Shown: positions 23,548 to 63,550, counted from the stretch's first letter. The stretch is DNA of 64,000 nt from Mytilus trossulus (GCF_036588685.1 NC_086381.1:25358001-25422000), one strand, 5' to 3'. Made by a program: numbers and translations. The notes: generated from the letters alone by a model not told the origin.

Positions 23548-26500
23548 GGTCAAGCGCAGAAATGTTTATATGGCACTTATACAGCATCCCCTCAAACCTC
23601 ACCCATGACAGAAAAGGAATACAAAGTGTATAAGCCTTTGACCAAATTGTTTCAAGATTCAGTAAGTATTACATTGTACATCAACATGAAGTGCAGCTAT
23701 ACAATTGATTTGAAAATACTTTTGGAACATATGTTCTTCTGGAAAGCTGATACTTTGACATAATAGTTAAAGTGCATTTTTATCTTTGTATAAGAGTATT
23801 TTTCCTATGTGATTAATAAAAATTTTGATATATACATTTGAAATGTTTGATTTGTTTTTTAAAACAATATTTATGTGACAATTAAAATAATGACTTTTTT
23901 ATTTTTGTCATTTAGTTAAGGTCTATTTAACTGTGAATTTATACATATCTTCTTGATTTATTTGATAGGGTGAAGGACAGAAGTTTCAATTTGGGAGCAT
24001 GTACCAGCCTCCGCCTCAGGCAGTATCTGAAAAAAGAATTGGACAGAATCAGACCATCCCAAAACAGCTGTTTCAAGATTTAGTAAGTATAAGATCAATA
24101 TTAAGTGCAGCCTAAACCAGTGAAATGAAAGTACTTTTCTAATAAGAAAAATATGCTTATACTTTGAAAAAATAGAAAGAGTGCATTTTTTTTTTTTTAT
24201 CAAAAATGACTTTCATTATACAAGAACATTTTTCCTTGTTGATTATGAAAACTTTGATACTCCAAAATGTTCATCTTTTGCTTTATTTTTTTTTAGTAGA
24301 AGCAAACAAAATAATGGCTTTATATTTTATTTTAATATAATATACTTGATTGATGTAGTGTATGATTAATTGTTTCAGGGTGAAGAATCAAGACAAAAAT
24401 CACAAGGTAATAAATTAAGTCACTACAGTAGATAACAATTAACTTCTGTTTCATTGATTGTAGCTGTATATATCTTTCTTAACAAAAAACAAACTGACAT
24501 CTAATCAAAGTATTACTTGACTGAAGTTGTTAGTTAAACAGTTACAATGCAAAAGTTTATATGATATTTATTTAACTAATCAGCAATTTTTGTTTATGTT
24601 TCATAAACAAAAATTGCTATAATCAAATAACATTGTGTCTAAATGATTAATACATGTTCTATATTTTTTTTTTAAACTGTTTTAGGAAAAATGGCCATTA
24701 GCATAAAGGAGACTTTACAACAGCGACAATGGTCGCTCATTCCAAAATTAAAAGGGGCACCTGCCCTAGCAAGGGAACTCTTAAAGAAGATGGTGCCAGA
24801 GGAAGAACTTTTTCAAGCTTCTTTTTCTGGCAAAAACAAAGATGGAAATAAACTGGATGATGTCCAGATGGAAATGATAAAAGGTAAAGAGAAAATATTT
24901 ATTAATGCATCTAGTTTTATAAGCTGTAAATTTAACCAAAAACACTCATGTGTACATGTATGACCTGTTCAAATAATCCTCTAGCCATTCCTACATCTAA
25001 TTTAAAAAGAAGATGTGGTATGATTGCCAATGAGAGAACTCTCCAAAGGAGACCAAAATGAAAGAAATTAACAATTATAGGTATTTGTATGACATTCAAC
25101 AATGATCATAGTCCATACAGCATAGTCAGCTATAAAAGGCCCAGAAATGTCAATGTAAAACAATTTAGCCCATTTAATTGCACCAAATGATGTTGGATTA
25201 AGCTAAACCACTTATAAAACTCCAAATTTTCAAATAAATCTGTCACTTTAATTAAATGTCTGTTTGTTGATGAATACCACACGTTTTTTTGATAATAGGT
25301 CAAAATTGTTGCATGAAGGATATAGTGTTTTGACATTTTATGTGACTGTTTATTTTATCTTCTATTATAAATCACCGGATTATAAATACTACGCAGTTTT
25401 TAACCTACAGCAGAGAATCTGACATTGTAAACAATAAGGCAATTAAATATCATCTGGTTTCTATCTTTCATACTTTTCTATGTATGTATCTATGAAATAG
25501 TTCAGTTTAATAAAATGTAGCTATAGAAGCAGTCACGTTTATTTAGTATAGTTGTGTTATATATATAAGAACCCAAATGCAGTTATAAATACACAACAGT
25601 TTGGCGACGAGGATGGGATATTAATTGTCTTTAATTCAAAGGACTTTTTCGAAAATAATTTTCTGTGAAATTACCTTGGTTAATTAGACAATGGCGGGAT
25701 ATATAGGGAAAATAGAGCCGTTTGATGATAGTACAGAAACGTGGAGTTCGTACGTTGAAAGACTGGAACAATATTTTGCAGTGAACGCACTTGAAAATGA
25801 GAAGAAGGTTCCAGCTTTATTGACATTATTAGGTGGGAAAACCTATGGACTTCTTAGAAATTTGACTTTACCGGATAAACCCGCAACTAAATCGTATGAC
25901 GATATTGTAAAGTTATTGAAAGACCATTTAAGTCCGAAACCATTGATTGTCGCAGAGAGATTTCGTTTTTATAAACGTTATCAAATACAAGGAGAAACTG
26001 TAAATAAATATGTAGCAGAACTTAGAAAGTTTGCCGAATATTGTGAATTTGGGAACTTAAATGAATCTTTAAGAGACCAGTTTGTGGTTGGACTTAAAGA
26101 TGAACAGACACAAAAGAAACTGTTAACTGTGCCGGACTTAACTTTTGTGAAAGCTATCGGAATTGCTATAGCCGTAGAGACTGCAAACAAAGATGCAATT
26201 GAGTTAAGAGGGAAATTCCACACCGAAAGTTCTGTAAACAGGATACAACGACAGCAACGTATTAAAACCGCCACCAAGAAAAACAGATAGACAAAAATCG
26301 TTCGTATGCTACCGATGTAATGGAAAGAATCACAAAGCAGATACATGTAGATTTAAAGACGCGGTGTGTCACAGCTGTAATAAAAAAGGGCACATTCGTA
26401 AAGCGTGTAGATCATCCGGTAAACCGAAACAAAGACCGGCGCAAAAGAATGTTAATTCCTTGGATAATCAATCACGGGAATACACAAGTGATGAGGATGA

Positions 26501-29500
26501 TTACTTAGGAATTCACAGTGTTAAAAATTCCAATCAGGATTCAATTTGGATTACGCCAAATGTGCATGGAAAAGAAATTAGAATGGAGCTGGATACAGGT
26601 TCAGCCGTGTCAGTAATTTCTGCTGTGGATTACGACAAGTATTTTCAAAATGAAAAACTTGAAAGTGCAAATGTCACCCTGAAAACGTATACAGGAGAGT
26701 TGTTAATTCCAACTGGATATATGAATGTGCAAGTTAAATATAATGGTCAATGTGAAAATCTTAAATTGTATGTAGTGCAAAAAGGTGGCCCTGCATTGTT
26801 TGGGCGTGATTGGTTAAGGAAAATCAATTTAGATTGGAAAAATCTCAAGTGGATTAATAAAATTTCAGTATCAAGAAATTCAAATGAAAAGCTGGATTTA
26901 TTACTGAAGGAGTATTCAAATGTATTCCGTGAGGGAATAGGGTGTGTTGCAGATATAAAAGCACATCTCACGTTAAAAGAAAATGCTTCACCGAAATTTG
27001 TAAAAGCTAGACCGGTGCCATTTTCAGTCAAACCGCAAGTGGAGCGAGAGCTAATAAGGCTTGAAAAGGAAGGAATAATTTCAAAAGTCGACACAAGTGA
27101 ATGGGCATCACCAATTGTCCCCGTTATGAAATCAAATGGTACAATTCGTATATGTGGAGATTTCAAAACCACCGTGAATCCTATGCTTAATGTGGATCAG
27201 TACCCGCTTCCGCGGACCGATGAGATATTCGCTACTCTCGCAGGAGGACAGAAATACACGAAACTGGATCTCCGTAATGCATATTTACATATGGAGGTAG
27301 ACGATGAGTCAAAACCATTGATGACAATCAATACACACAAAGGACTGTATCGTTATAATAGGATGTTATTCGGAATTGCGTCAGCACCAGCTATATGGCA
27401 AAGAACAATGGACCAGGTATTAAATGGACTTGATAGTGTACAATGCATGTTGGACGACATGATTATAACGGGCCCTGATGACGAAACACACTTACAAAAC
27501 TTGAAAAATGTGTTACAGAGACTTCAGAACTATGGTTTAAGGGCAAACTTGCAGAAATGTTCTTTCCTCAAGGACAAAGTCATATACTGCGGACATGAAA
27601 TTAGTGCAGATGGACTCAGGAAAACTACAGACAAAGTACAAGCTGTAATGGAAACTCCGACTCCGAAAAATGTAAAGGATGTACGTGCATTCTTAGGACT
27701 AATAAACTATTATCACAGATTTATGCCTAATTCAGCAACTGTACTTAAACCATTGAATCAACTGCTAGAAAAAGAGCGAATATGGCGCTGGACAGACGAT
27801 TGTGAAAAGGCCTTCAAAAAGGCAAAGGAGCTTATTACGTCAGACCAAGTGTTAACACACTACAACCCCGAATTACCAGTCCGTTTAGCGTGTGATGCTT
27901 CGCCATTCGGACTTGGAGCAGTGTTATCTCACGTTATGCCAGATGGATCGGAAAGACCAATTTCTTTCGCATCGAGGAGTCTTACAAAATCCGAAAAGAA
28001 CTATGCACAAATCCAAAAGGAGGCGCTTGGAATAGTGTGGGGAGTGAAGAAATTTAACACATTTCTGTACGGTAGGAAATTTTCTTTAATTACTGATCAT
28101 CAACCTTTAACAGCAATTTTTAATCCTGAAAAATCAATTCTCCTGGTATAAACCACCCATCAATGTAGACATAAAACCAATACTTGCACCAAATAAACAA
28201 GTATAATCAATACTTGTACAAAATATCCAAGTATAATCAATACTTGTACCAAATATCCAAGTATAACCAATACTTGTACCAAATATCCAAGTATATATAT
28301 GTACACACTCTGCATATAAACGCCATAAAAGGCTATAATAAATACCAAATACTTTGTAAAGTGGATAGTCGCACGACAACGCCGATGCTCTATATTTAAT
28401 GATAAATAATCTCAATACATACATATATATCTACACATATAATATATAACTCAAACATCAGTATCGACACAAAAAACTCTCCAAATAAAAAGCTTCATAA
28501 ACTTTAACCAGAATTAAAATTTACCAAGAAAATTCGACTGCTCAGATTGACGATGTCGTGCTGAATGATAACATAGGCAATAAAATACCGCGAAAATAAT
28601 TTTGAAGCGGGAAAACATTACGCCCTCTATGCTACATATGATGAAACACCCAGGAGAAATTAATTTCACTCTAATGCACTGCCCGTTTAAACGAATGAAA
28701 TTATAATTCTCCTGGTATAAACCACCCATCAATGTAGACATAAAACCAATACTTGCACCAAATAAACAAGTATAATCAATACTTGTACAAAATATCCAAG
28801 TATAATCAATACTTGTACCAAATATCCAAGTATAACCAATACTTGTACCAAATATCCAAGTATATATATGTACACACTCTGCATATAAACGCCATAAAAG
28901 GCTATAATAAATACCAAATACTTTGTAAAGTGGATAGTCGCACGACAACGCCGATGCTGAACCCAAAGAACGGGAAGCTATTTAGTACTATGTATGCAAA
29001 ATTATATAGTCCAAATGTAAATAAAACAAAAAAGATATTAATTTCCCAAATTCTGAGAAACAATCCTACATTTTGATAAATCTTCTTTCACATAGCCATC
29101 CTTTGAAGTTTCCGACTTCCAACGTCCATGACGTTTAAAAAGTCTATCTGAAAAACCAAACCTTGCAGCGGTAATAGCACCACAAGATCGTAAACTATAT
29201 AATCCGTATGCTTTTATATCGGTAACAAATGGAGAAAATTGCAAAGTAAATTCCCTCATCCTTGTATAGTTTAAAGGCTAATTTGTTGAACGAAAAACAA
29301 AAAGTTCTTTCACTTGTGACAATTTCTGAATGAATACAAATTTTAATCAGATTAAATGCTACTCTATGCATATATAATTCCAAATTAGGACTGGACGCAA
29401 ATTTGTGCGTTTTTCACAATAATAAACCAGTTTCCATCTCTGTAAATATCCGTTCTTCCGATACAAATTGAAATGTGTATTGACTTGCAATTAATTGCAT

Positions 29501-36588: not shown

Positions 36589-38059
36589 ATGGAAGGTAGA
36601 TTGCCCAAGACAAACCACCTGTGTCATCTATATGATGATTTGGCAGTCAAATATAGAGTTAGAAATACCAATATGCCTGAAGAAAAAGAAGGTGGAAAAG
36701 ATGCTACAAAAAGGTATTGTTAATTTCAAGAACTAATTAAATTGAAAAGGGATGGGTTATTTACCTTAAGCAAGTTTTTTAATTATTTAATTATTTGTTA
36801 ATATTTAATTTAATTTTAATTAATAAATCAAGATTTATTCTATTCAGTTGCGATCAAGAACTATTTATAAAAAAGGAAGAAAGGGTATGGTTGAAGCATG
36901 AACACAATGCTATATATTAGATAGACATTGGGATATTGACTGGTCTTTAATAATTTAATTGAACATGCATTACACAGGTAAATAAATTTTGGTCTTTCAT
37001 TTATTGAGATAGTCAATGAAACAAGTTTTACTTATTTTATTGAATAATTACAATATTAAACTGTGCAAGGCCTTCACCGATAGTCAGGGACTTCAACATT
37101 CCCATCTTTGTCTAATCAATTTATACAATGTTTAAGTTAAAGGGCCTATTTACCGTACATAGAGTCAATGAGAGAAAGATGATTAAATCTTTGACATACA
37201 CATCTTTTACATTTATACAGTTAATTTCATCTTTTAAATCTACACAGTTAACTTCATCTCATAAACATTTGACATGTGTAAACAATATTTAGAAATAGCA
37301 ACTAAATCTGATCTGATATGTAGATTTCATATATCTTGCATTATTAATATCATTCTTAGTTATATTGCTGCATACCATGATTTTATTGACATTTTTTTTA
37401 ACAAGCTCTTGAAAAAGTTTTATCCATGGGGTTGGCACAGTTTAGTGAAAAAAAATAAATAATAAAAATTGTTGCTTTCTCATCTGAAACCCCACTTTTT
37501 TGTTGTTTGATGAAATTTTTTTAAATTTGGCATAATTAATATTTTGTACAAAAGTCATTTTTCTTTTCCATAATTGTTCAGTATTTGTATATTGTAGCAT
37601 TGGAAAAAGATCTCTTGATACAGACTCAGAGATTAAAGAACTGAAAGATCAAGTAAAGAGATTAAAGAGACGGGTAGAAAAACTAGAAGAAAAGCGTCCT
37701 TCTTCGAGTAAAGCAGGAAATGACACAACAAATTGTTCTGAAATGTCCGATCCAATTAAGTACAATGGATTTACATTAAACGAGCTAAAACTAAGCATAG
37801 AACATGTGGAATCATGTCAACCCGCCATTGATATTTTATTGAGGAAGATGTTTACCTCGGAAGAAATAACATCACAATCTGTTACAGGAAAAAAACTTCT
37901 AAATGTTCATTTGCTGGTCCAAGGCCACCAATGGACCAAACAAAACTTCATGTTATGAGTGACATCTTGGGGGCTAAGTTTCAAGAAAAATTCTCGAGAA
38001 AACTAATGGTGGAAAAAAATCAGAACGTACAAAAGGTGTTGAGAAAAAAAAATTGTTAA
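36589..38059 (+). pseudogene. BEN-domain gene 2 (coiled coil plus BEN), two exons, one frameshift
   Basis: Exon 36589-36713 joins exon 37598-38059 in phase 2: EIKELKDQVKRLKRRVEKLEE (coiled coil), AIDILLRKMFTSEEITSQSVTGKK, a shift in the A run at ~37890, then GPRPPMDQTKLHVMSDIL...MVEKNQNVQKVLRKK. Confidence 0.7.
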
Positions 38060-38214
38060 GAAAGTTGACTTTCAGTTCATTAAAACTGTAATTGAATTGA
38101 GATTTTGTTGCATCTTATCCTTCCTGCCATGAAAATGCAGAGATAAAGGTTAAAATACAGTGTTTTCAGCTTGTCCTGGAGGATATTCCATCCATTTAAA
38201 ACACCCATTTTTCT

Positions 38215-38696
38215 CCCTCTCAGACAGTTATGTATAATTCATGAATAGTCATGAACATTTCATGAACTGTTCATGAACAGATTTCATGAATGGTTCATCA
38301 TATCTTCATGAACATTTGATGAACAATTCATGAACTGAAAATCGACAGTAATGTTCATGAACTTTAATGTTCATGAACAATTCATGAACAAGAAAGGTTC
38401 ATGAACATTTAAGTGTTCATGAACTTCAATGTTCATGAACAATTTATGAACAATTCATGAACAAGAAAGGGTTCATGATCATTGTTGTTCATGAACATTT
38501 AAATGCTCATGAACCTTTCTTGTTCATGAATTGTTCATGAACATTAAAGTTCATGAACATTACTGTCGATTTTCAGTTCATGAATTGCTCATCAAATGTT
38601 CATGAAGATATGATGAATTGTTCATGAAATCTGTTCATGAACAGTTCATGAAATGTTCATGCATATTCATGAATTATTCATTATCATCTCACAGGG
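38215..38696. mobile_element. Fold-back element with CCC...GGG termini built from GTTCATGAAC palindromes (CMC/EnSpm-like, non-autonomous)
   Basis: The left ~210 bp is the reverse complement of the right ~210 bp. Ends ccctctcagacagttatgtataattcatgaat and (reverse complement) ccctgtgagatgataatgaataattcatgaat align without gaps. Confidence 0.75.
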
Positions 38697-40102
38697 GTGA
38701 CGCAGAAACCCTTTGTGATGCAGTTTTGCACAATCTTGGACAGGAATGGGGTTTTGAATTGACGAAGTTGAGGGGACAGGGCTATGATGGCTGTGCTACA
38801 ATGACTGGTGCGATATCTGGAGTTCAGAAAAGAATTCAAGATGCATGGCTGGAGGCGAAATATTTCGTACATTGCAATTCACATCGTCTTAATTTGGTGA
38901 TAGTCAACACTTGTAATAAAGTTGTTGAAGCTAGAAATGCACTAACCATACTTGGTAAGATAACATGGTTCATATGTGGCGTGAGCAAACGGAAAGCCAT
39001 TTTAATGAAAGAGGTCAAACAAGGAAACAAAGATTTAGATTTCGATTTACTCTATGACAATGAAGATGCCCTGTTTGAAGCTGCAATGAGACAGACCATG
39101 ATGCCGAAACTATCAGAGACTAGATGGACGTCTAGGGTAGACACATTGTCTTGGCTTTTGGCTCACTATAAGTCTCTACTAAATGTGCTTGAAAATGTAC
39201 AGTCAAATTCTAAAGGTCAGGCTGCAGCCGATGCTTCTTCATATCATGCAGTGCTACTTAAATTTGATTTCATCCTTGTAACAGTAATGTTACAATACAC
39301 CCTAGGCTATATCAGACCGTTGTCCATTCTGCTTCAGTCTGAGGCTTGTGATCTAGTAAAAGCTCATCAGGAGGCTAGAGATCTTCTGGTAATATTTCAA
39401 GGAATAAGGTCGGATTCCGATGCTAAGTTTCACGATATTTACGAGAGGAGCGCATCAATCGCAACTGAAAATGATGTGGTACCAACAAAACCAAGAAGCA
39501 CGCAACGGCAAAGGCACAGAGCAAATGCTCCAGTCGAAAGTATCGAAGAGCATTTTCGTGTTAACTACTTTCTACCGTTTATTGATCATATCATTTCACA
39601 TTTGGATTCGAGATTCCCGGAAGAGCTGAAGGCAATTTTCTATGGAAACTACCTTGTGCCATCGCTTGTAGGAAAAATAAAAGAAGAGGTGGTCACTTCA
39701 ATGAAACAAGAATACTCGGTAGACTTGCCATACCGAAATGATTTTACGCAAGAAGTTCATAGATGGGTGGCAAAATGTCATAGAGACAACTTGTCGTTAG
39801 TAACGACGCTAACAGGTGCAATTTTGTATGCTGACCCTGAGTTATATCCAAATATCCATTTGGTATTAAAGTTGCTACTTACACTGCCGTTCGGCTCGTG
39901 TTCGTGCGAGAGATCTTTCTCTGCTCTCCGACGGTTGAAGACGTGGTGCAGAGCTACAATGACGGAAGATCGGCTATGTGGATTAGCATTGCTGCATGTT
40001 CACTGGAATGACGCTGTAGGGCAAGTTAGAGCTGAATCAGTACTTAGAAGATGGGATTTATTAGGAAACAGGAAGATTCACCTTGCATTTACGGCTGATT
40101 AA
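38697..40102 (+). pseudogene. hAT transposase, C-terminal ~465 aa (ZMYM1/THAP12-like, Tip100 group), 5'-truncated
   Basis: LRGQGYDG, HCNSHRLNL, SETRWTSR and dimerisation motif CERSFSALRRLKTW.R.TM.EDRL.GLALL. The frame is open; the listed N-terminus comes from the fold-back element. Confidence 0.92.
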
Positions 40103-40711: not shown

Positions 40712-41510
40712 ATAGCACTCAATTGATTTTCGAGCTATAGCGGGCCAAAGTTTACAAAGAACTTCAATTTTTTTATTTCTCATCAGAAGGGACTTAATTG
40801 TTTCTTTGGATTCCTCTTGACTTAAAAATTGAGCTTCTGGATGAGTGCAGATAGTTTTTGTAAAGCTATTACTGTTTTCAAGCTTTAAGCTGCCAAAGGG
40901 GGTCATATAACCGCACGTTTTTAAAGTACCACATTTTAATTTTAATTATTTTTTTTACATCTTTGGTGTACGACCAACATTATATATTATGTATCAATGA
41001 TTACCAGCACTTTAAATGTACATGTATTCAAAATGCTGCGGTCATATCATGCCCAATGGTGCAGCTGTTCATTTTGTAATGCTTGCAGATATTCATTTCA
41101 TTTAGACAATTTTTGGTATGCAAGTCTACCAGGATGACTTACAGATCAAGCTTGCATTTTGTACATCTTTGACTATTTTTGATGGCATAATAAACCTTGT
41201 TCAACCGGTAGGGGACTATGTATTTCTGTGCAATACGATCCACACGTTCATACATTTTGTGTATTTTGATTTGAATTTTGAATGCGCTACCTACCAAAAA
41301 TCTGGGGCCATCCAGAGTTGTGCCTGGTCATAGTAAGAACTTTCGGTTTTATGGCGGTCAAAGTCGAAAAATTGATAAAAAAATAATTCAAAAATCATAC
41401 ATGAATGGAATATTATATAGGATGAAATTTGGTATGAAAGTGAGTAACAAATATAGAAAATTGCACTTCCAGCTGGCGTCCATTACACACAATAACATTT
41501 TCTTTTTCAG

Positions 41511-41629
41511 GTGAAATATTTAGCAGATTCCTGAAGGAAATCTCCATTGAAGACAAGACCAAGGAATGGGGGAAAATTACTGTTATTATGAACGACAAAA
41601 TTAGAAAACTAAGAAAACAATTAGACTAG
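41511..41629 (+). pseudogene. BEN unit 3: orphan terminal exon
   Basis: tttcag acceptor, then EIFSRFLKEISIEDKTKEWGKITVIMNDKIRKLRKQLD*. Similar to the last exon of BEN unit 4 (WTKLTININDKIRGLK), both phase 1. Confidence 0.6.
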
Positions 41630-41687
41630 AATGAGTGTATTTATATGTAGATGTATATTTTTTAGAATGAGTGTATTTAGATGTACA

Positions 41688-42170
41688 TTTTTTTAAGCTC
41701 ACCTGTCCTAAAAGAACAGGTGAACTTTTCCATCACTTGGCATCCTTTGTTAACTTGTTCAAAAAACTTCTATTCTGAAACGGCTGGGTAGATTGGATTG
41801 AACTTAATAGGAATGATGTTTGACATGTCCTCTTCAAACGATTCTCATTTTATATTGATCCGATGAAAAACATATCTGCGGTTGCTATAAATAGAACATA
41901 AGGGTAAATTGCTGTTTTTGGCTAATAACTCAAAAACCATTACAGATATCGAAAAACTGACATAGGGTAAACGTGATCAGCATGCCAAGATCTACCATAC
42001 AATTTTCAAGAAAATTCCGAAACCCATCTTGGAATTATTGCCCTTTGTCAAATTTTCAAAATTTTAACCTTTTTGGTCTTTATTTCCAAAACAATCAAAG
42101 ACAGCTGGTTAAGTTTAAATTGCAAAAATGTTCAGTATGTCAAGATCTACCTACTTTGCAATTGTAGAAA
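41688..42170 (+). mobile_element. Old, diverged HINE-like fragment
   Basis: Starts tttttaagctcacctgtcc...caggtgaacttttccatcacttggc, resembling the 5' end of the 14507 and 47351 elements. Confidence 0.55.
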
Positions 42171-42186
42171 ACAATAGGGGCATCCT

Positions 42187-42332
42187 CAGGGGTTTTCTTC
42201 AGAGCAAGGGATGACGGAGATCCCTCTCAATTAATGCCCCTTCAAAAATGGTGTATTCTTTAATACAATTTAAGAACAAGGTGGGCTTGTGATTATATCC
42301 CCATCTGAACAAATTTTCTGAAGAAAACGCTG
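42187..42332. mobile_element. 146-bp MITE with 5-bp flanking duplication
   Basis: TIRs CAGGGGTTTTCTTCAGA / TCTGAAGAAAACGCTG, flanked by ATCCT on both sides. Confidence 0.6.
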
Positions 42333-42604
42333 ATCCTATGTCTCATAACTTTTTAGTTTTTTATTTAAATTGGAATTTTCATGCAGTATAATTTTTATAG
42401 TGTGGATATTATAATTGCTTCATTATATTTGTACTTTTAGTAGAAATGAATTTTTTATAGTGAAGATTAAAGAATGATCATACCACAAAGATTTATGGTT
42501 GTTTTTGTTAAACTGTGAGTTAGCATGATGCATGATTTACTGAAACCCTAATTTCCAAAACAAGTACTGTGACCGCAAATTATTCAATACAACAATTTTT
42601 TATT

Positions 42605-42985
42605 GGAATTCCACTGGAGAGAAATTGTCTGGCATTCCACTGATCTACTGGAATTCCACTGATTGACCAGTGATAATTCCAGTGGAATCTACTGGAATTC
42701 CATTGATTTACCAGTGATAATTCCAGTGGAATCTACTGAAATTCCACTGATTTACCAGTGAAGATTCCAGTAGATCAGTGGAATGCCAGAGAAAATACCA
42801 CTGGAATTCCACTGGAACTTGTTGCATTCCACTGGAGTTACCACTGGTAAATCAGTGGAATGCCAGACATTTTTTACCGCTGGATTCCACTGGAATTCCA
42901 CTGGAATCCAGTGGTTAATCCACTGATTTTGCCAGTGGCTTTCCAGTGGAATTCCACTGGAATTTTGTCATCTTTTTCTATTGGG
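42605..42985 (+). repeat. Palindromic CCAGTGGAATTCCACTGG array ending ...CTATTGGG (putative transposon right end)
   Basis: Dense CCACTG/CAGTGG motifs in both orientations; ends abruptly at GGG inside an exon of BEN unit 4. Confidence 0.65.
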
Positions 42986-44765
42986 TAACAACTAAAGGAT
43001 CAGAGGAAGAAATTGTTGATGACAGTGCTGATGGTAATTAGGAAATGACAGTTGTAGCTTGATTCCTATAAGATTGATTGAAGCAGAGATAGACTTATTT
43101 CAATAGCATAAAGTTAAATGAGAATTTATAACACATTATAATAATTTATAATTTATAATTTGGTTTTGGATTATTTGTCCTTTTTGTAGAAAAATTGAAT
43201 TGGAATAATTAGTTACTTGAGCTTCTTCTGATTAATCCTTGGTATATATGTTAGGTCTTGATGACATATGTTAGGTCTTGATGACATATGTTATAAAATC
43301 TTAACTTGGTCAGGGATTGTCTGCCTATAATTAAGTCATTTTATATTGTATTTATAGATTAATGATATTTTTTTCTATTGTACAGGATCAATACTGCAAA
43401 CCCATTACAACAAAGATGATGATTTATCAAGTGCTGGAGAAGAAGGTAAGAATTAATTTCCTTTGAATACAGATTTCTGTAATAGCTAAGGGCTATTCCA
43501 GAAAATCATGTAGTGGGGAGGGGGGAAGGCAGGTACTTTTATTAGAATTTGATGGGTGGTTGTTATTTTAGAAAGATTGCCTGAACAATTTAAGGAAATA
43601 CCCAATTAAAAATTTATGCATGATGGAGTAAAAAAAAAGCCTTCCTTCACCCCATACATTTATTTCTGGATTAGCCCTAAATATATACAATTGTGCAATT
43701 AATTAAAAAATACATCCTAAAAGCAAATCACTGGAATTTTTTTTTCTGTTGTGCAATAAAATTGCTGGTTAGCGACTAGTCTTCAAGGAGCTTTTTTTTA
43801 TATCTACCATATATGATATATTTATTTAAAATTATTTATGTACCCCTTTAAAAATTCAATTTAATGCATCAGATGATATAAACAGAAATATTATAGCCAA
43901 TCAGAAAATTTATATGTCCAAAATATCCTGTACATGCATGCACATTCATTATGTACTATCTCATCAAAGAGAACTTTTTATTTACAGAACTGGCCTATGT
44001 TGGAGCAGCAAAATACAATGTGAAATTAGAAAAGGTTATTCTCAAAAGAATAATTAAAACATCTAAAACACCAGAAAAACTGGCCCTCAACCTTATAGCG
44101 CCACTTTTATCAGAGTATGAGATCAACAACTGCACTCTATATGGCAATCAGCAACATAAGAAGGAAGCAGTTGCTGAAAACAAAAGGAGAGCTATAAGAT
44201 GTAAGATTGACATAACAAATAGTCTCATTAAAATGTTCAAAACTAATGGAATGTACATGCGTGCATTTCGGATCAGTCATGACAATCGATGAGTTGAATG
44301 TTTTTGCAAAGAATGTTTTAGGTTGGAATCAACATTGCATGACTAGCAAGGTCACAATGGATGATAGAAAATATGTTTTGGGGTATAACTTCTTAACAAT
44401 TACCTCAAATTTCAACCAAATTAGTTGTGAATAGATTTCAGGGTTTATCAAATTAACTTTGAAACACTATTATTACATGTTAAAAAAATAGGGCAAACTC
44501 AAAAGTATATGGAAAGGATCAGATTCTGAAAAGATTTAATATGTTCCAGAAGAGATTGGGAATGCATATAGGCAAATTAAAAGAAAATATAGCTTACTGC
44601 ATCCATGTTTAGTTTTTTGTTTTTCTTTTAACAGCTGCTGTGTTTGATAAATTTGGAGGAGAAAAAGAACAGAATGAACAACTATGGACAAAGCTGACCA
44701 TCAATATAAACGATAAAATTAGAGGTTTAAAGAATGGCAAATATAAAAAAACAGTGAAATATTAG
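42986..44765 (+). CDS. BEN-domain gene 4 (acidic linker plus BEN), 5'-truncated, frame intact
   Basis: Phase-1 exons ..43033, 43386-43445, 43988-44200 and 44635-44765 splice to ...KTPEKLALNLIAPLLSEYEINNCTLYGNQQHKKEAVAENKRRAIRSAVFDKF...LWTKLTININDKIRGLK. Confidence 0.75.
43490..43677. mobile_element. PIF/Harbinger-like MITE in an intron
   Basis: TIRs GGGCTATTCCAGAAA / TTTCTGGATTAGCCC with a TAA TSD. Confidence 0.8.
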
Positions 44766-45544
44766 ATGTGATAGACCAGCTGTCTTAAACAAACTGTATC
44801 TTCAATTCTTGATTATATCTAGGACGAGTTTGAATTAGTGCAGGAAACTGTATTTTATTGAAGAGTGAAGTCCCTTGAAAACATTAAAAAAATGATTTCC
44901 AAAATATCTTGACTAACTATGTTTGACCTACATCATTTTCATTTATAATAACAAATGCAGGTTAACTTAGGTACTTATGGTGTAAAGTAATCATGTACCT
45001 CTTCACAACATGATAAATATTTTTAAGATAGTTTCAAAGTAACATTTTGATTTAAGGGTGACTACGAAATTAAGCCATTGATTTCTGTATATCATCATTT
45101 TTATATAACAATTATAATATACACATGAAAGAAGTAAATATGACACTGTTATATATATATTCATACAAATATAACCATTCAATGCTGCATTTTATTTGTG
45201 TGATGTAAAGATTATAATTTTTTAACCTAAAAAATTTAAGGAAAAGGATAATTGTAAAATAAACTTGTTTTTGAATTCCCTTGATTTAAAATGTATTATT
45301 TGTATATATATATATGTATGCTGATTTTGTTGATTCAAATATTGTATATTTAATAAATATTTTTCATTTTTTACAGTTGTTTACATCTTAGTAGTCCATA
45401 TTAAGATGTTGCAAAGTAATAGTTATTGATATTAAACTCTGGGCTAATCTGTGAGTACAAAAGCATGTGCATGACTTGCATTTCCAAAAAAAAGACAATA
45501 AACTATATTTAAGACATGAAAAAATAACGTGATTGATCTGCTGT

Positions 45545-45942
45545 TTTCACTGGAATTTAAAATAATTTCACTACACATAGTGTTGAAGAATCCATTTAAA
45601 TTTCTCTGGTTTTGCATTAAAATCCCACTGGAATTATTGAAATTTCATTGGGATCCCATTGAAATTTCAGTGGAAATTGCCCAGAATCACACTGGGATTT
45701 TAAAAATATCACTGAGATTCCACTGGAATCCAAGTGGGATTTTTGAAAAAATATAACTGAGATTCCACTGGAATCCAAGTGGGATTTTAAAAAATATCAC
45801 TGAGATTCCACTGAGATTTCACTGGAATCTTCTAAAAATCCCGACAAAATTGTCCAGTGGAATTCCAGTGGGAACCAGTGGAATTCCCAAGTGAGATTCA
45901 TGTGGGATTTCAGTGGAATTCCACTGATTATTTTTAGTAGGG
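45545..45942 (+). repeat. CCACTG(G/A)GATT / GGAATTCC array ending ...TTAGTAGGG (putative transposon right end)
   Basis: Same core motif as 42605-42985, includes a 45-bp tandem duplication, ends at GGG. Confidence 0.65.
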
Positions 45943-45995
45943 TTAGTAATAAGATATGTTTAAACTAAACCTTAATTTTGCTTATATCCTTGTAG

Positions 45996-46383
45996 AAAGA
46001 CTTACAAAGCTAGAGGAGGATAATACTAAATTAAAGAAAAAAAACAAAAAAATGGAAGAGAAATTGGATTCCTTGGAAAAAAAGTATTATCTGTATTACA
46101 TGTATCTTCTGAAACCAAGATGCCTGAGGCTGTGCCGGAGAAAAGGGAAAGAACAGTACCTGAGAAAACAGAGATAAAGAAAACAGAGACAACAAAGACT
46201 GAAAGTACCGAGGAAGAGACAAATAACCCTATGAATGAAATAACAATTGACAAGTTAGACAAAAGTGTGAAGGGGTTTATAGGGGAAAATTATATTTTCA
46301 AACATTTTTGTTTCAAAATATTTTCTTTGGAAGAACTTAGGAATTGTACAAGAACCGGTATATCAAAGCCTGAAAGGCTGTAA
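45996..46383 (+). pseudogene. BEN unit 5: coiled coil plus truncated BEN
   Basis: ttgtag acceptor; RLTKLEEDNTKLKKKNKKMEEKLDSLE, a frameshift in an A run, then ...FKHFCFKIFSLEELRNCTRTG. Confidence 0.6.
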
Positions 46384-50185: not shown

Positions 50186-50440
50186 TGTTCTTGAACTTTA
50201 GACATGTGTCATAAGTTAAAGAATAAGTTCAAGAACTTGTGACATTAAAGTCAAGAATAAGTTCAAGAACTTATGTCGGAAGTTCAAGAATAAGTTGTGT
50301 TGTAAGTTCATGAACAAGTTCTTGAACTGGTTTCAACAGGTTCTTGAACTAGTTCAGGAACATTTAGTTCTTGAACTTGGAAGTGGGCCATTTAATGTTC
50401 TTGAACAATTTTAAGAACAGTTCTTGAATTCCTCGCAGGG
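50186..50440 (+). repeat. GTTCTTGAAC/GTTCAAGAAC array ending ...CCTCGCAGGG (putative transposon right end)
   Basis: About a dozen quasi-palindromic motifs; terminus resembles ...CTCACAGGG at 38696. Confidence 0.65.
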
Positions 50441-50641
50441 GATGGACACCAGCAGCCAGAGGCTGGCCATTTCAAGAATTAATAGAAAACCCCCTAGATG
50501 TAGGAACAAGTTTGCAGAGGCCGTAACAGCAATCTTGGCCAAAACCACACCTAAAAAAAAGTTGTCCCCGCGGAAACTTGGGTTTGAAGGAAAGTTTTCT
50601 GAAGAAATTGTAAAAAACATAGTAACAAGAAATCCCAAGGT

Positions 50642-56034: not shown

Positions 56035-56079
<45 letters not shown>

Positions 56080-56582: not shown

Positions 56583-56763
56583 CATTAGTGTGTCTTGGAG
56601 ACCAAATAAGGAATAAAAATGAATGCAGCAGATTTGTCTCAATGTGGGGAGCACAGCCAGACAGCTGAAAAACTTGTTTTAAATCTGCTTGAGTATTTGG
56701 TTACAAAGGCAGACTGCCAAGACATGACTGTATATGGTCAACGAAAGAATAAAATGGAAATGG
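56583..56763 (+). pseudogene. BEN unit 6: exon paralogous to 43988-44200, cut by an LTR
   Basis: IKMNAADLSQCGEHSQTAEKLVLNLLEYLVTKADCQDMTVYGQRKNK aligns with VKLEKVILKRIIKTSKTPEKLALNLIAPLLSEYEINNCTLYGNQQHK. Confidence 0.65.
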
Positions 56764-58320
56764 TGTAACAAAGTTACTTGGATCACCATTATATGCGTCA
56801 GCAATTTATAATACGTCCAGTGATTAATATCTATTCATATCGACTTATACTTACATTGAGGATTTGTGTTAAGAAACAATAGAATGAAACACATGTTGCT
56901 GATGTCAGCCGAGTGTTTAGATATATAAACTGTTTTGTTTTCTAACGAAAGAAAGACTTCTCCGGTGCCACTATACGCACGTTGTCTCTCACATACATTG
57001 TAAAATAATGCAATAAAAGTTTGTCAAATTATCTAGCGTTAGTGTTACACTAGTAATTTTTGGTTCCGTGACCAGGATTCGTCAACGACGTCTGCCACAG
57101 ATTTTGAAGGTATGTCTATATTTTGAATTGTTTTGGTGGGAGTATGGCTGACCAGCAAATGGGGGAAGTTTTAGGAATCCAGGTCATAACCAGCAGGCTC
57201 TATCGGCTCAAGTCCACCATTTATCAAATACCGTGGGCACGCAAAGTGTTTCACAAGTTATTCCATCTTTTGGGGGGAATCCAAAGGAGTTTAAAGCATG
57301 GATCAAGGGCGTTGAAAAGTATGCTGTCTTGACGCATGCGATAGGGGAACAAGGATCACAATAAGTTAATTGTATATCAGTCAAGTAAAGGGGCTGTGAG
57401 TGATTATATTAAGAGATATTTGACCGCGAATGATCAGGCAACTTGGGACGAATGCAAAACCCAACTAACGGGGAGATTTTCTGAGGTAACTGACCCCCAA
57501 CATGCGTTCTCTCTGCTTCTTCAAGTTAAACAAAAGTCAAACTCTTGATGGCTTTAGTCTAAGAAGGATATATAGGACAGCAACGGGATGTCGAACCCGT
57601 GGAAAGACAAATAATCGGTTTCTTTGTGGATGGTTTGTTGCTCGACAAACTCAAAATGAAAATAATGCAAGATAATCTTGATGCCGCATTTACTTTGGCA
57701 ATGACAGAACAAAATTTGAAGACGCGTTTTGGTTAAGAACGAAAGGGTCCAACAAATAGGGATGATCAAGTAGATTGTAGGAGTTATCCTCCACGTAAAT
57801 ACCCTGAGACGCACCAAGTTAATTTGGTACAACAGAGAAGTATGGCAGAGGTTGTCTGCTACTCCTGTCGCTGGAAGGGATACTTCCAAAGATATTGTCC
57901 GCAATAAAATGGACAGGGAAACTAAAGCACTCTCTTCATTATGAAGCCAATGAAGGGAGAAATAGTACAAATAAAATACTTAAACATAAAAGTAAAAACT
58001 ACGGTGATTAGACAAAAACATTTAAGTTAAATAAAGCATTTGAAATAAATTCAACAAATTCTCCAAATTCATGTTTAATTAAAATTAAAAAAAATAAATA
58101 TAGAGCTCTAATTGATTCCAGGGCAAGTTGCTCTTTATTTCATAAAAGAGTTTATCAAGCTATGAAAAGTCCACCTAAGTTAATTAAAAGTGAAGTCTCT
58201 CTTCAAGCAGTAAACGGTAAGTCCTTATTAGTAGAAGGTATCGCAAATTTCACATTTGATATAGGGGGATAAAAAATAAATCATGTTTTTCATGTAGTGA
58301 CAGATATGAACAGAAAGTGA
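56764..58320 (+). mobile_element. Decayed Gypsy 5' half: LTR 56764-57049, tRNA-His PBS 57061-57078, gag/protease relics
   Basis: TGTAAC...GTTACA termini; PBS TGGTTCCGTGACCAGGAT; frameshifted gag (QSVSQVIPSFGGNPKEFKAWIK), knuckle relic CYSC..KGY....C, protease RALIDS. Confidence 0.8.
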
Positions 58321-59185: not shown

Positions 59186-59415
59186 TAAAATGTTGTGTAT
59201 AGTTGGTAACTTTTTCCAGTCTTACAAAAACCAGGCAGATGCAAACGATCTTTCAAGTAAAAAAAGAAATTATGAGGTTTCAATTAAAAGCAAACAACGA
59301 AATGAAAAACTTTGCATTTAGAATAACTGCTTTTATCAAATACCATGAAGAAATGTTAAAGTGAAGCTGCGGCTTTCCAATTATGTAAAAATAAGATGTG
59401 ATATAATTGCCCATG

Positions 59416-60440: not shown

Positions 60441-61607
60441 ATTAATGGACAAGCTTCTTAACATAAGCAAGGCAAATAAAGGAATTGAGCCAAGTGAAGT
60501 TGGAGCAGTACTTAAAGTCTTGTGAAAGATTCATTTGTATTTACTCAGATGGCATATTCAGACATAAATGTCAAAAGAAGACAATTGATTAAAACAAATT
60601 TGAGGCTGTGTTATCGATCTCTCTGCCCAGACAATGCACCAATATCTGATAATAGTTATCAAAAGTACCAGGATAACAATTTAATACGCCAGACGCGCAT
60701 TTCGTCTACATAAAACTCATCAGTGACGCTCATATCAAAATAGTTATAAAGCAAAACAAGTACAAAGTTGAAGAGCATTGCGGATCCAAAATTCCAAAAA
60801 GTTGTTAACAGTCTCTTTAATGATAAACTATTCAGTGATTCAGAATAGAAAGTTGTGCTAATATTACTTTTAAAATTCGAAATTTAACGTTAACACATAC
60901 ATTTTGCGTCGTAAATGGAATGAACAGAAATATGATTTTAGGACGAGATTGGTTAAAACAAAATGGACTTTGTTTATATTTTGATTTATGCTATGCCTTT
61001 AATTATAATGTCTTTAAAACGATTTAAAATCATAAAAGTAAAAGGCCAGACTTTTATTTTAAATAAATATTCTTTTTCAAGAATGATGAAGCTTCGAATA
61101 TTCTCCAGTAATATTTGTTGCATAAGTTTGAACTGTTTGAGTTCATTAATCCTCCCTCATTTTCACAAACTGATGTGATATAACCAGTCCAGACTCTGCT
61201 TGAAATAAAATAATAATAAATAATTTATTAATAAATGTTATTTTTCAGAATGATGAAGCTCAGAGTCTTATTCCTAATTCTCTTGGCATACCCTGTCTTT
61301 CATAAGAGAAAATGCCAGATGGCTAGTTGCTTTTGAGATAAGTTTAACCCCCTATCAAATGTTAATAACGACGCTTGAGGAACATTTGTCAGACAAAGCT
61401 TGTCTGAGGAACTATTGAAGTATTGGCAACAGGAACGAAGAGACCCTGGTAGATATTTTAGATACGATAATACTATCAGTATTTTAAAACACGAAATTTC
61501 CAATACAAATTTAAGACAAATTTTTTTACTTTTATAATGTTTGTTGAATACTATGTTCAATTGTTAAAGAAAGTAACAGTTATCTTGCTGGTTATTGTGA
61601 TTTCTTC

Positions 61608-61830
61608 AGTCAACTATAATTTAGTCATAGTTGACCATGGTTTACATTTTTACCATTGTTAAAAATTTAGTTCAACATGGTTCTACAGTATGATAAGGCA
61701 TTATAGTTGCCCAATGACCATGGTTCAGCATAGCATAATCCATGGTTTTTACACTATGGTCATTTTATATGTTTGTCAAACCATGGTCAACTATGGTCAA
61801 CCATGGTTATAGGCAGCACTTTTGCCAGGG
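61608..61830 (+). repeat. ACCATGGT palindrome array ending ...TTGCCAGGG (putative transposon right end)
   Basis: Repeated gaccatggtt / aaccatggtc / aactatggtc motifs, ending at GGG. Confidence 0.6.
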
Positions 61831-63089
61831 GATCTGGTTTCTTTATTTTAGATGTTGTTCTAGTTAGGAATTAGTTTGCATCAGTACCAGTTCCCAGCAT
61901 CTGAGCCTTTCTGGTTTTGACTTAAAAATATTTTACGCAGCAGACAAATCTCAAAAGTGTTTTAAAACAAACTCATGGCTCAAATGAAATATGCCATAAT
62001 GTTATGGATAAGAGACAACATCAAAATGTCAGTGCATCACTTAAAGTATGAAACAAAAATGAAAAGCTGTGGAATGAATAACAGAAGGGTGACAGGTGAT
62101 GGTCATGTTACCCTGGTGCTGCTGGGGAGTGGGAATTCTAAATTTTAACAGTAGGAGGTAAGTTAACTTACATGTTTAATGTTTTTTGAATATATGTTTT
62201 ATTCACTTACATTTTAAACAAAATAAATATCTAACAGAAAAAAGTATGCATATTTGATAAATTTTAGTATAAAAAAAATAAATCTATTCAATTAGTTTTC
62301 ATGGAACTTGATGACATTGATACTCTTCAGTATACACAAGTTTATACTTCAAGGCATGACATGATAGCTGTAAGAAGGTCACTGGGTGCTCTATGGAGCA
62401 TCTACATGTGTTTCTAACAAAGAATTCCCTCTATTAATTAATTATCAAACATTATCTGTTGATAAGGGTACATAAGACTGAAGACCATCGGTATAAAATA
62501 TCTCAAACACAGTTTTGCTTAATTTTAATACACTAGTATATATATATATGATATTCGTCAAAATAAAAATGAATAGGGTAACTTATTTTTTATTTTTTAG
62601 ACATCATTCAATTGAAAAGGAAAGTTGATGACACATCTATCCACCAGGTCATCAACCATTTGCTGAAGCCAAGTACGAAACACAAGGCAAAATAGACGAC
62701 AGATAGCAAAGCTGAACTTTGAACATGTCCAAAATGTTTTACTTTACATTAAAATAATTCTAATTCTTAATTTTATTTTTAATATGTATTATTATTTTAA
62801 TCTTTTTTGCTAGTTATAATATATTGCAATATAATTTAAAAGGTGTAGCTCTATTTTAAAGTAATCAGGTTAATTTAATCTGATGAGAACTCCTGCAGAT
62901 AATTACTTTCCCAGTGTCCTATTTTGAAAATAATATGTTATTCACCTATACAGAACTATACACAGAAGTTATTTGTATTAGAATAATCATTCCTTAGTTG
63001 AGCATACTGACAAAGATTTAATGGGCAACAAACGCACAATAGTGTCAACTAAAACCATAACATTTCTACAAAAAATATGTTTTATTTCA

Positions 63090-63550
63090 GGGAGTATGTT
63101 ACAATAAAAGAGTTTCAAGAGCTTCATAAAAAGTATAAAAGTTTAATGGAATGCATTATCATACTAGAAAGAAAATCTGTAATTCCTGACCCTATAGTAG
63201 TACATGTAGCTGAGGAAGAATCATTGTCATTGGAAGGAATACCACCCACAACATCAATCGATCAGCTGTTTAATGGGAAAATATATAATCAGCTGGAGGA
63301 CTCAGTCTGTAATGTGACAAAATGTGTTCATACCCTATTACTACAACTATTTACTATAAATTACATTTAAAGCCATAGTGTAAGTGGCTATGCTTCCAAT
63401 AGCACATGTGTGGCAAAACCTAAATTTAACACTAAATTGTATGACACTTTGATGTATATTGTTCTAAAAAAAATCACTAAAGCATAAAAAAATGAATAAA
63501 AAAAAAAGAGTACAAGCAGTACAGAAAAAGTCCTTGCTTATAAGGAATAG
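63090..63550 (+). pseudogene. BEN unit 7: coiled coil plus BEN, paralogous to unit 2
   Basis: Reading through the stop at 63368 gives FNGKIYNQLEDSV...LLLQLFTINYI*SHSVSG...KPKFNTKLY...KRVQAVQKK, aligning with YNGFTLNELKLSI...LLRKMFTSEEITSQSVTG...RPPMDQTKL...EKNQNVQK. Confidence 0.65.

What the first reader, a model, noticed from the sequence alone, without database searches (positions are those of the whole stretch)
23548..63550. Candidate new system: co-oriented BEN-domain genes paired with palindromic subterminal arrays and GGG transposon ends
Seen: seven BEN-like units, all on +, mostly hidden from the ORF track by introns. Five are followed by a dense array of one short palindrome that stops at GGG: unit 2 then GTTCATGAAC (ends 38696), unit 3 then CCAGTGGAATTCCACTGG (42985), unit 4 then the same core (45942), unit 5 then GTTCTTGAAC (50440), unit 6 then ACCATGGT (61830). 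Established: BEN-solo proteins dimerise through coiled coils and can bind palindromes (Drosophila Insensitive binds CCAATTGG); plant CACTA TnpA binds subterminal repeats; some animal CMC/EnSpm elements have CCC...GGG ends. Inference: a family of large DNA transposons whose BEN proteins act like TnpA, binding their own end arrays for transpososome assembly or anti-silencing.
Basis: partly seen in the sequence, partly recalled or inferred. Interest (0 to 1): 0.9.

Follow-up and report, generated by a model that had tools for sequence, protein, structure and literature searches.

The report
BEN gene cluster interleaved with transposon ends
A mussel (Mytilus) gene cluster of small BEN-domain DNA-binding genes, several of them broken, is interleaved with the repeat-rich right ends of small non-coding DNA transposons; the two lie together more often than chance, but nothing found here shows that the BEN genes belong to those transposons.

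Summary
All five palindrome arrays exist at the stated places and end in GGG. Six of the seven "BEN units" are BEN-like. One, BEN4, is transcribed and spliced, and its product folds as a BEN domain.

The arrays are the right subterminal regions of non-autonomous terminal-inverted-repeat (TIR) DNA transposons. These have CCCC...GGGG termini and a 2-bp target duplication, with family-specific palindrome arrays at both ends. Dozens of two-ended copies of 0.4-2.5 kb lie elsewhere in the genome. None of those examined carries a BEN gene or a long ORF.

The BEN genes are single- or low-copy. BEN4 has scallop homologues.

No BEN unit has a left terminus, a target duplication or a transposase. "Large BEN-encoding transposons" is therefore not shown.

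The pairing is nevertheless not random:
- There are five arrays in 29 kb, against roughly one per 60-80 kb in other loci.
- Every terminus points away from the upstream BEN gene.
- In two BEN subfamilies, a BEN gene piece plus its downstream array was copied to other chromosomes. In the ACCATGG-linked subfamily the copies end at the GGG terminus; in the other pair the shared sequence runs 4 bp past it.

Best reading (0.5): a host BEN-solo cluster with transposon insertions and rearrangements anchored at transposon ends.

The parts
24676..24960 (+). BEN unit 1: open frame holding the N-terminal two thirds of a BEN-like domain; the rest is presumed to lie after an intron
   Evidence: A local HMM, built from 16 BEN domains of this genome that pass Pfam's cut-off, gives E=0.0064 over profile positions 10-54. 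This is the best of 1459 open frames. Pfam itself is silent.
37536..38056 (+). BEN unit 2: coiled-coil region plus BEN domain, split between two overlapping frames (37536-37955 and 37832-38056), so a frameshifted pseudogene
   Evidence: Pfam BEN E=0.014 on the second frame, profile positions 21-75 of 76. The local HMM places the N and C halves collinearly. The genome holds no close paralogue, only a distant match to the C6 BEN.
38214..38697 (.). Array 2: complete palindromic MITE with GTTCATGAAC arrays in both arms. The right TIR is canonical; the left TIR is degenerate.
   Evidence: 90 matches at about 40 other places (both strands counted), with homology confined to 38230-38698 and unrelated flanks. 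The 30-nt TIR beginning CCCCTGTGAGATG has 22 genomic hits, six of them as 411-497-bp pairs.
38698..40102 (+). 5'-truncated hAT transposase remnant that starts exactly at the MITE's right end
   Evidence: Dimer_Tnp_hAT E=3.6e-6 and the tail of DUF4371.
40712..42989 (+). 2.28-kb segment holding the unit 3 C-terminal BEN exon (41513-41626) and array 3. It is duplicated at C5:53467909-53470146.
   Evidence: 96.6% identity with sharp boundaries. The right boundary lies 4 bp past the GGG. The C5 copy keeps a BEN N-terminal exon about 100 bp upstream, which the window lacks.
42597..42985 (.). Array 3: right subterminal array and terminus of a CCAGTGGAAT-type non-autonomous transposon
   Evidence: 93% copies on C1 whose flanks diverge right after GGGG. 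Their left TIRs lie 2.2-3.2 kb upstream. The window has no left terminus.
42986..45290 (+). BEN4 transcription unit. Exons: 42986-43032, 43385-43443, 43986-44200 and 44635 to at least 45290, with the stop codon at 44763-44765.
   Evidence: Spliced contigs in two runs, with three GT..AG introns. The frame stays open through all four exons but has no in-frame ATG. The public model P0002 equals exons 3+4. The fold is BEN.
45474..45942 (.). Array 4: the last 470 bp of a roughly 2-kb or longer non-autonomous element of the same core motif
   Evidence: Copies at 96-98% on C35 and C29, and one on C11 (80% over the whole stretch, 94-97% in its blocks), end at the same GGG, after which their flanks diverge. 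Left of position 45474 they carry a different shared sequence.
46030..46361 (+). "Unit 5": a coiled-coil-like exon and a BEN-like motif, cut at 46362 by an expressed repeat
   Evidence: No HMM or atlas support. No reads cover 46000-46199, and loose read ends pile up at 46362.
50187..50441 (.). Array 5: GTTCTTGAAC/GTTCAAGAAC array ending in CAGGGG
   Evidence: Only the terminal 40-44 nt has relatives in the genome, on C46 and C6. A 74-codon ORF starts with ATG at 50442.
56610..56765 (+). Unit 6: lone N-terminal exon of a BEN4-type domain
   Evidence: E=2.6e-20 against the BEN4-family profile. tblastn with mussel and scallop homologues also finds it.
61634..61831 (.). Array 6: sparse ACCATGGT array ending in CAGGGG
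   Evidence: Homology of the next unit to its C5 paralogues begins at 61833. The promoter-like sequence that those paralogues share upstream is absent from the window.
63053..63484 (+). BEN unit 7: BEN domain with an in-frame stop at 63368-63370
   Evidence: phmmer E=4.5e-7 to the BEN at C6:6625499, which scores 38.2 bits with Pfam.

Best explanation
This is a decaying tandem cluster of host BEN-solo genes. Each unit has a single BEN domain, and some have an N-terminal coiled coil. The domain of BEN4 is split by a phase-1 intron.

The cluster has collected many mobile elements: an LTR retrotransposon, a hAT remnant, SINE-like repeats and gag fragments. It also holds five right-terminal pieces of related non-autonomous TIR DNA transposons.

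Those transposons have CCCC...GGGG termini and make 2-bp target duplications. Both subterminal regions, 200-400 bp each, carry a family-specific short palindrome repeated every 10-20 bp. These repeats are presumably the binding sites of an unidentified transposase or accessory protein (inference).

The pattern "BEN, then array, then GGG" arises because insertions between co-oriented genes necessarily follow one gene and precede the next. After insertion, the elements lost their left parts together with adjacent DNA. As a result the surviving right end now abuts a truncated hAT ORF, the start-less first exon of BEN4, and the 5' exons of unit 7, which have lost their promoter (inference from the junctions).

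Rearrangements anchored at transposon ends also copied BEN pieces plus the adjacent array to other chromosomes.

Shown: the identity of the arrays as transposon ends, the BEN fold and splicing of BEN4, the low copy number of the BEN genes, and the duplicates that stop at or within 4 bp of the GGG end. Inferred: the order of events and the deletion mechanism.
For: ARRAYS ARE TRANSPOSON ENDS.
- Homology to other copies stops at the GGG, and flanks then diverge.
- The 2.5-kb family has both termini, and a 2-bp TSD in 5 of 6 copies (GT, TC, TA, TA, AA). It has about 20 copies at 95-100% identity and no open frame over 122 aa inside the element.
- The MITE of array 2 and the ACCATGG element in L076 are two-ended and non-coding.
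- No BEN-like frame occurs within 1.5 kb of about 29 array-bearing loci, apart from the C5 duplicate.

BEN GENES BEHAVE AS GENES.
- BEN4 is spliced at three GT..AG introns in two runs.
- Its product is identical to RefSeq models of two Mytilus species and has scallop homologues at 45-47% identity over the aligned proteins.
- The AlphaFold model has pLDDT 87.6, and its top 17 listed structural matches (ranks 1-19) are all BEN domains, with TM-scores of 0.5-0.74.
- BEN4 DNA is unique, and its family has only four other loci.

NO SECOND END.
- No left termini or left arrays occur in the window.
- Right ends abut truncated units.
Against: - Five arrays in 29 kb is about ten times the rough background. 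That background was 3-4 unrelated array-type elements in 237 kb of other loci.
- All four solo ends in the window, and the one next to the C6-type BEN, have the terminus pointing away from the upstream BEN gene.
- Unit-7-type BEN genes at C6:6.625 Mb, C5:51.278 Mb and C2:77.933 Mb are each followed about 240 bp downstream by an ACCATGG array. The homology among these copies stops at the GGG.
- The window/C5 pair does nearly the same with a CCAGTGGAAT array, the shared stretch ending 4 bp past the GGG.
- Two BEN4-type units (3 and 4) are both followed by CCAGTGGAAT-type arrays.

A pure insertion-and-decay model does not predict these regularities.
Confidence: 0.5

Rival explanations
1. BEN genes are carried by these transposons, and their products bind the element's own subterminal palindrome arrays, in the way TnpA does in En/Spm. 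The dispersed BEN-less copies are deletion derivatives (MITEs) of BEN-bearing parent elements. The window holds tandem, left-truncated parent copies.
For: - Arrays are enriched in the cluster.
- The terminus orientation is constant relative to the upstream BEN gene.
- BEN plus array is co-duplicated to other chromosomes in two subfamilies with two different motifs, with the boundary at the GGG terminus in one and 4 bp past it in the other.
- Units 3 and 4 are of one BEN type and have one array core. Unit-7-type BENs go with ACCATGG arrays at three loci.
- Solved BEN domains bind short DNA sites, and the nearest structures are BANP and Insensitive bound to DNA.
Against: - No BEN unit has a left end, a TSD or an associated transposase.
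- Unit 2 has no close paralogue and is frameshifted, while its array family has about 40 loci.
- The closest BEN4 paralogue (C5:63881403, 73% identity) has no detectable CCAGTGG array nearby.
- Array 4 is 96-98% identical to copies on C35 and C29 whose adjacent sequence is unrelated to BEN4.
- Older unit-7-type paralogues (78-80% identity) lose homology about 60 bp before the array.
- BEN4 homologues exist in scallop.
Confidence: 0.25
2. The arrays belong functionally to the next unit, not the previous one. The right end of the transposon supplies the promoter or the 5' exon of the downstream gene, and insertions in that orientation were retained.
For: - The BEN4 RNA contig starts 1 nt after the GGG of array 3, and its ORF is open across the junction.
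- An ATG-started ORF begins at 50442, directly after array 5.
- Homology of unit 7's 5' exons to paralogues begins 2 nt after array 6, where the paralogues have a GC-rich promoter-like stretch instead.
- A 404-aa open frame starts at the right end of the ACCATGG element in L076.
Against: - Assembled contigs break at repeat boundaries, so the contig start is not a mapped transcription start.
- BEN4 has no in-frame ATG after the junction, which looks like damage rather than co-option.
- The C6, C5 and C2 arrays have no common downstream gene.
- The hAT ORF after array 2 is a truncated remnant.
Confidence: 0.15

Closest known systems
Non-autonomous TIR DNA transposons (MITEs) with subterminal repeat arrays, as in CACTA/En-Spm (CMC) elements
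   Same: - Terminal inverted repeats.
- A short TSD; 2 bp falls within the 2-5 bp range cited for the CMCT lineages (PMC12730594).
- A few hundred bp at each end packed with a short motif in both orientations.
- Non-coding deletion derivatives, and mosaic copies that share interiors but differ in their ends.
   Different: - The termini read CCCC...GGGG, not the 5'-CA..TG-3' or CAC...GTG given for CMC lineages (PMC12730594, PMC4079192).
- No transposase was identified, so the superfamily is unassigned.
piggyBac-type ends
   Same: CCC...GGG terminal trinucleotides (own knowledge of piggyBac).
   Different: The target duplication is 2 bp of variable sequence, not TTAA.
BEN-solo DNA-binding factors (Drosophila Insensitive and Elba/Bsg25A; BEN domains of BANP, BEND3, NACC1)
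   Same: - Single BEN domain.
- The predicted fold superposes on BANP, Insensitive, BEND3 and Bsg25A BEN-DNA structures.
- Units 2 and 5 have coiled-coil-like N-terminal segments.
   Different: - The sequences score below Pfam's BEN cut-off: 13.7-19.8 bits against 23.2.
- The DNA target is unknown.
- The genes sit in a tandem cluster with pseudogenes.
En/Spm TnpA (element-encoded protein that binds subterminal repeats)
   Same: Only the proposed logic is shared: a DNA-binding gene lying next to arrays of a short motif near a transposon end.
   Different: No element containing both the gene and two ends was found. There is no TnpD-like transposase in the unit. TnpA is not a BEN protein (own knowledge).

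Membership tests
BEN domain (Pfam PF10523) | Score at or above Pfam's gathering cut-off (23.2 bits) | tested here: not met
   The best scores are 16.0 bits for the unit 2 C-half, 13.7 bits for the BEN4 product P0002 and 19.8 bits for the M. coruscus homologue P0003. The six-frame genome search found no hit in the window.
BEN domain (Pfam PF10523) | BEN fold (mainly helical DNA-binding domain of about 90-110 residues) | tested here: met
   AlphaFold2 model of P0002 has pLDDT 87.6 and pTM 0.76. The top 17 listed Foldseek PDB matches (ranks 1-19) are all BEN domains, with probability 0.91-1.00 and TM-scores of 0.5-0.74 over 94-123 columns. The ESM atlas gave 16 of 30 hits in BEN clusters.
BEN domain (Pfam PF10523) | Sequence-specific DNA binding | not testable with these tools
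   Needs EMSA, DAP-seq or SELEX.
Non-autonomous TIR DNA transposon / MITE | Terminal inverted repeats, a target site duplication, many copies with unrelated flanks, and no coding capacity | tested here: met
   TIRs are seen. A 2-bp TSD is present in 5 of 6 copies. Copy numbers are given. There are no long ORFs.
CACTA/En-Spm (CMC) superfamily | CACTA or CAC...GTG termini | tested here: not met
   The termini begin CCCCATAG, CCCCTGTGAG, CCCCTGTCAG, CCCCTGCGAGG and CCCCTGGCAAAAG.
CACTA/En-Spm (CMC) superfamily | DDE transposase of CMC type, plus a second ORF that binds the subterminal repeats | tested here: inconclusive
   No coding copy of these families was found among the loci examined.
piggyBac | TTAA target duplication | tested here: not met
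   The flanking duplications are GT, TC, TA, TA and AA.
   The window has no left terminus or left array. The left boundaries of the C6, C5 and C2 copies could not be read.
   This holds for two subfamilies, where the right boundary lies at the GGG or 4 bp past it. It does not hold for units 2 and 4.

The most novel reading that the evidence does not exclude
Certain bivalve BEN-solo subfamilies are the dedicated end-binding proteins of a so far unclassified group of CCCC...GGGG DNA transposons with 2-bp TSDs. Either the elements encode them, or host genes co-evolve with the elements. Each BEN subtype would recognise the palindrome repeated in the subterminal arrays next to it. BEN-plus-array modules would be mobilised from the GGG end.
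Probability: 0.25. Interest if true: 0.75.

Novelty: new member of a known kind. Interest (0 to 1): 0.4.

Why it matters
If the ordinary reading holds, this locus shows how transposon ends reshape a fast-evolving gene cluster in a mussel genome. It also yields several new non-autonomous transposon families, and one expressed BEN gene whose annotated start codon lies in an intron.

If the BEN genes and the arrays are functionally tied, BEN domains would join THAP and TnpA-like proteins as transposon-end binders. That would give a ready set of protein and DNA-site pairs for studying BEN specificity. It would also give an origin story for BEN-solo factors.

Tried and rejected
- Pfam on ATG-started and stop-to-stop frames gave only one weak BEN hit.
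- The genome-wide PF10523 scan did not touch the window.
- I looked for left termini matching each right end and found none.
- I looked for an autonomous partner. The 2.5-kb CCAGTGGAAT family and its relatives are non-coding. The 6.8-kb copy on C19 holds only another insertion.
- The large ORFs upstream (16824-22580) belong to a separate multi-copy element of about 7.5 kb. It has its own TIR (TACTCCAGCGACAAA), no arrays and no BEN, so I rejected it as the missing transposase.
- piggyBac was rejected on the TSD. CACTA was rejected on the termini.
- A Helitron-like reading of the one-ended copies was considered and dropped. The families have clear TIRs and TSDs, and the ends are not of the TC...CTRR type.
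- Tandem co-duplication of gene plus array by unequal crossing-over was rejected. Arrays 3 and 4 are 93-98% identical to dispersed copies, whereas the BEN units are only about 35-45% identical to each other.
- The literature did not give a superfamily with CCCC...GGGG termini and a 2-bp TSD.
The left boundaries of the BEN-plus-array copies therefore could not be read.
- No typed spliced join of window exons was sent to any tool. The public model P0002, which equals exons 3+4, was used instead, and the other exons were handled one by one.

Full report
WHERE THE WINDOW LIES. The window is G000:C9:25358001-25422000 of a 1.3-Gb genome with about 31% GC. The product of one gene here is identical to RefSeq models of Mytilus galloprovincialis and M. 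trossulus. The organism is therefore a Mytilus mussel.

THE ARRAYS ARE REAL. Tandem Repeats Finder and direct reading show dense arrays at five places: 38238-38681, 42643-42964, 45693-45923, about 50187-50429 and 61634-61807.
- GTTCATGAAC with at most 1 mismatch occurs 32 times against 3.1 expected, 22 of them inside array 2.
- The GTTCTTGAAC, CCAGTGG and ACCATGGT words are confined to their arrays.
- Two caveats apply. GTTCTTGAAC is not a true palindrome, and the ACCATGGT array is sparse. The full 18-mer CCAGTGGAATTCCACTGG is exact only once in the window and at six sites genome-wide.

WHAT THE ARRAYS ARE. They are ends of non-autonomous TIR DNA transposons.
- Array 2 is a whole palindromic MITE (about 38214-38697). 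Its homology to about 40 other places is confined to 38230-38698, and the flanks are unrelated. Its 30-nt TIR beginning CCCCTGTGAGATG occurs 22 times, six times as pairs 411-497 bp apart.
- Array 3 matches copies on C1 up to the terminal G run, after which the flanks diverge. The left TIRs of those copies lie 2.2-3.2 kb upstream.
- Array 4 (45474-45942) is the last 470 bp of an element whose copies on C35, C29 and C11 end at the same GGG. Left of 45474 those copies carry a different shared sequence and a second array about 1.5 kb upstream.
- A related 2.5-kb family has about 20 copies at 95-100% identity. Its ends read CCCCATAGAAAATATC... and ...CTCTAGGG, and both ends carry arrays. It has no open frame over 122 aa inside the element, and a 2-bp target duplication in five of six copies.
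- Mosaic copies share that interior but end in array-3-type or array-2-type ends.
- A 1.95-kb element with ACCATGG arrays at both ends and termini CCCCTGTCA...TGACAGGGG lies on C12 and is non-coding.
- Arrays 5 and 6 have no close copies, but their termini have the same design. The last 40-44 nt of array 5 recur on C46 and C6.
- The window contains no left terminus or left array for arrays 3-6.
- The superfamily is unassigned. The termini do not fit CACTA/CMC, and the TSD does not fit piggyBac.

WHAT THE BEN UNITS ARE.
- BEN4 is a real, spliced gene. Contigs from two runs join 42986-43032, 43385-43443, 43986-44200 and 44635 to at least 45290 through three GT..AG introns.
- The frame stays open across all four exons, and the BEN-like domain is split by a phase-1 intron.
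- A library-wide phmmer search with exon 3 found 22 proteins. They include the public model of this gene, an M. coruscus protein named as BEN domain-containing by UniProt, and two scallop proteins.
- An AlphaFold2 model of the public product has pLDDT 87.6. Its top 17 listed PDB matches (ranks 1-19) are all BEN domains: BANP, Insensitive, BEND3, Bsg25A, NACC1 and BEND6. The language-model atlas agrees.
- Pfam scores stay below the cut-off.
- A profile of the BEN4 family finds the lone N-terminal exon of unit 6 (E=2.6e-20) and the lone C-terminal exon of unit 3 (E=0.003).
- A profile of 16 BEN domains from this genome ranks frames of units 1, 2 and 4 as the top six of 1459, with the N and C halves in the right order.
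- Unit 7 matches a Pfam-significant BEN on C6 at E=4.5e-7 but carries an in-frame stop. Unit 2 is frameshifted. Unit 5 has no support.
- BEN4 has no in-frame ATG in its four supported exons. The N-terminal 57 residues of the M. coruscus homologue have no counterpart in the window. Its 5' coding part therefore seems to have been lost where array 3 now ends.

EVIDENCE AGAINST ONE SYSTEM.
- About 29 array-bearing loci with 1.5-kb flanks hold no BEN-like frame, apart from one duplicate on C5.
- BEN4 DNA is unique, and its family has four other loci, all on C5.
- Unit 2 has no close paralogue in the genome, only a distant match to the C6 BEN.
- No BEN unit has two ends, a TSD or a transposase.
- The large ORFs at 16824-22580 belong to a different multi-copy element with its own TIRs and no BEN.

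EVIDENCE FOR A LINK.
- A k-mer scan that recovers all five arrays finds only 3-4 unrelated array-type elements in 237 kb of other loci. Five in 29 kb is therefore about a tenfold excess.
- Every solo end has its terminus pointing away from the upstream BEN gene.
- The same scan found ACCATGG arrays ending in ...CGCCTGGG about 240 bp downstream of unit-7-type BEN ORFs at C6:6.625 Mb and C5:51.278 Mb.
- Copies on C6, C5 and C2 share the BEN 3' part and the array at 84-93% identity. Their homology stops at the last G or within 4 nt of it. One copy starts inside the BEN ORF, so it is 5'-truncated.
- Older paralogues (78-80% identity) lose homology about 60 bp before the array.
- Window segment 40712-42989 (unit 3 exon plus array 3) is 96.6% identical to a C5 segment. 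That segment keeps the BEN N-terminal exon upstream, and the shared sequence ends 4 bp past the GGG.

READING.
- The most economical account is a host BEN-solo cluster hit by these transposons. The elements then lost their left parts together with neighbouring DNA. Rearrangements anchored at transposon ends also copied adjacent BEN pieces elsewhere.
- This explains three junctions where a right end abuts a damaged unit: a truncated hAT ORF, BEN4 without its start, and unit 7 without the promoter-like stretch that its C5 paralogues share.
- It does not predict the enrichment, the constant orientation or the partial match between BEN subtype and motif.
- A promoter or exon-donation model gets about 0.15.

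LIMITS.
The left boundaries of the BEN-plus-array copies are therefore unread.
- The RNA contig start at 42986 may be an assembly break at a repeat boundary.
- No typed spliced join of window exons was sent to any tool.
- DNA binding cannot be tested here.

EARLIER NOTES OF THIS SCAN. Three notes on this same window gave leads. One concerned co-variation of BEN subtype and palindrome, one a TnpA/TnpD-like layout upstream, and one an Academ-like transposase. I tested each in part, as set out above.

Noticed in passing
window 16824-22580 (+); L071 3285-8984; L073 3069-8750: Three ORFs of 368, 462 and 381 aa form a broken copy of a multi-copy protein of about 1900 aa with no credible Pfam match (one weak sub-threshold hit). 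Intact 1894-1900-aa frames lie on C3 and C10, and one of at least 1810 aa runs off the fetched stretch on C12. The C10/C12 element is about 7.5 kb and has 15-nt TIRs (TACTCCAGCGACAAA). It has no palindrome arrays and no BEN. It is probably an undescribed or highly divergent transposase.
   Followed up: partly
window 43951 versus exons 42986-43032 and 43385-43443: The RefSeq-type model of BEN4 (126 aa) starts at an ATG that lies inside intron 2 of the RNA-supported transcript. The supported exons 1-4 hold no in-frame ATG.
   Followed up: partly
window about 25250-34830: Ty3/gypsy LTR retrotransposon with gag, protease-RT and integrase ORFs; its LTRs at 25321-25598 and 34447-34724 are 99.3% identical. 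A nested insertion of about 4 kb is bounded by 188-bp direct repeats that are 100% identical (28522-28709 and 32544-32731). On the minus strand at 29038-29259 it carries a short ORF that looks like a tyrosine recombinase by eye (not searched).
   Followed up: no
window 14507-16732 and 47351-49075; L037 2255-3072: An element built of tandem units of about 500 bp occurs twice in the window at 98.5% identity. It also occurs next to a unit-7-type paralogue on C5.
   Followed up: partly
window 35116-37362: A 2.2-kb stretch has a 99% identical copy at C1:17058454-17060694. Its first 160 bp or so is a SINE-like repeat; the search had over a thousand first-look candidates, and nearly all 40 scored matches fell on it.
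   Followed up: no
window 57152-58269 and 59940-60458: Open frames that look like retroelement gag, zinc knuckle and aspartic protease by eye (only a weak sub-threshold Pfam gag-asp_proteas hit) lie between the unit 6 exon and array 6.
   Followed up: no
window 46362-46992: An expressed repeat: many RNA reads at 95-99% identity, with loose ends at both borders. It cuts the putative unit 5 right after its BEN-like motif.
   Followed up: no
L076 3094-4305 (C12:1519093-1520304): A 404-aa cysteine-rich open frame starts at the GGGG end of the two-ended ACCATGG element. This is another case of a transposon right end abutting an ORF.
   Followed up: no
L066 reverse strand 1311-1388 (C5:51277638-51277715): The GGG end of the C5 BEN-plus-array copy abuts the exact terminus of another repeat. 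That repeat has more than 30 copies at 92% identity, almost all on C5.
   Followed up: no
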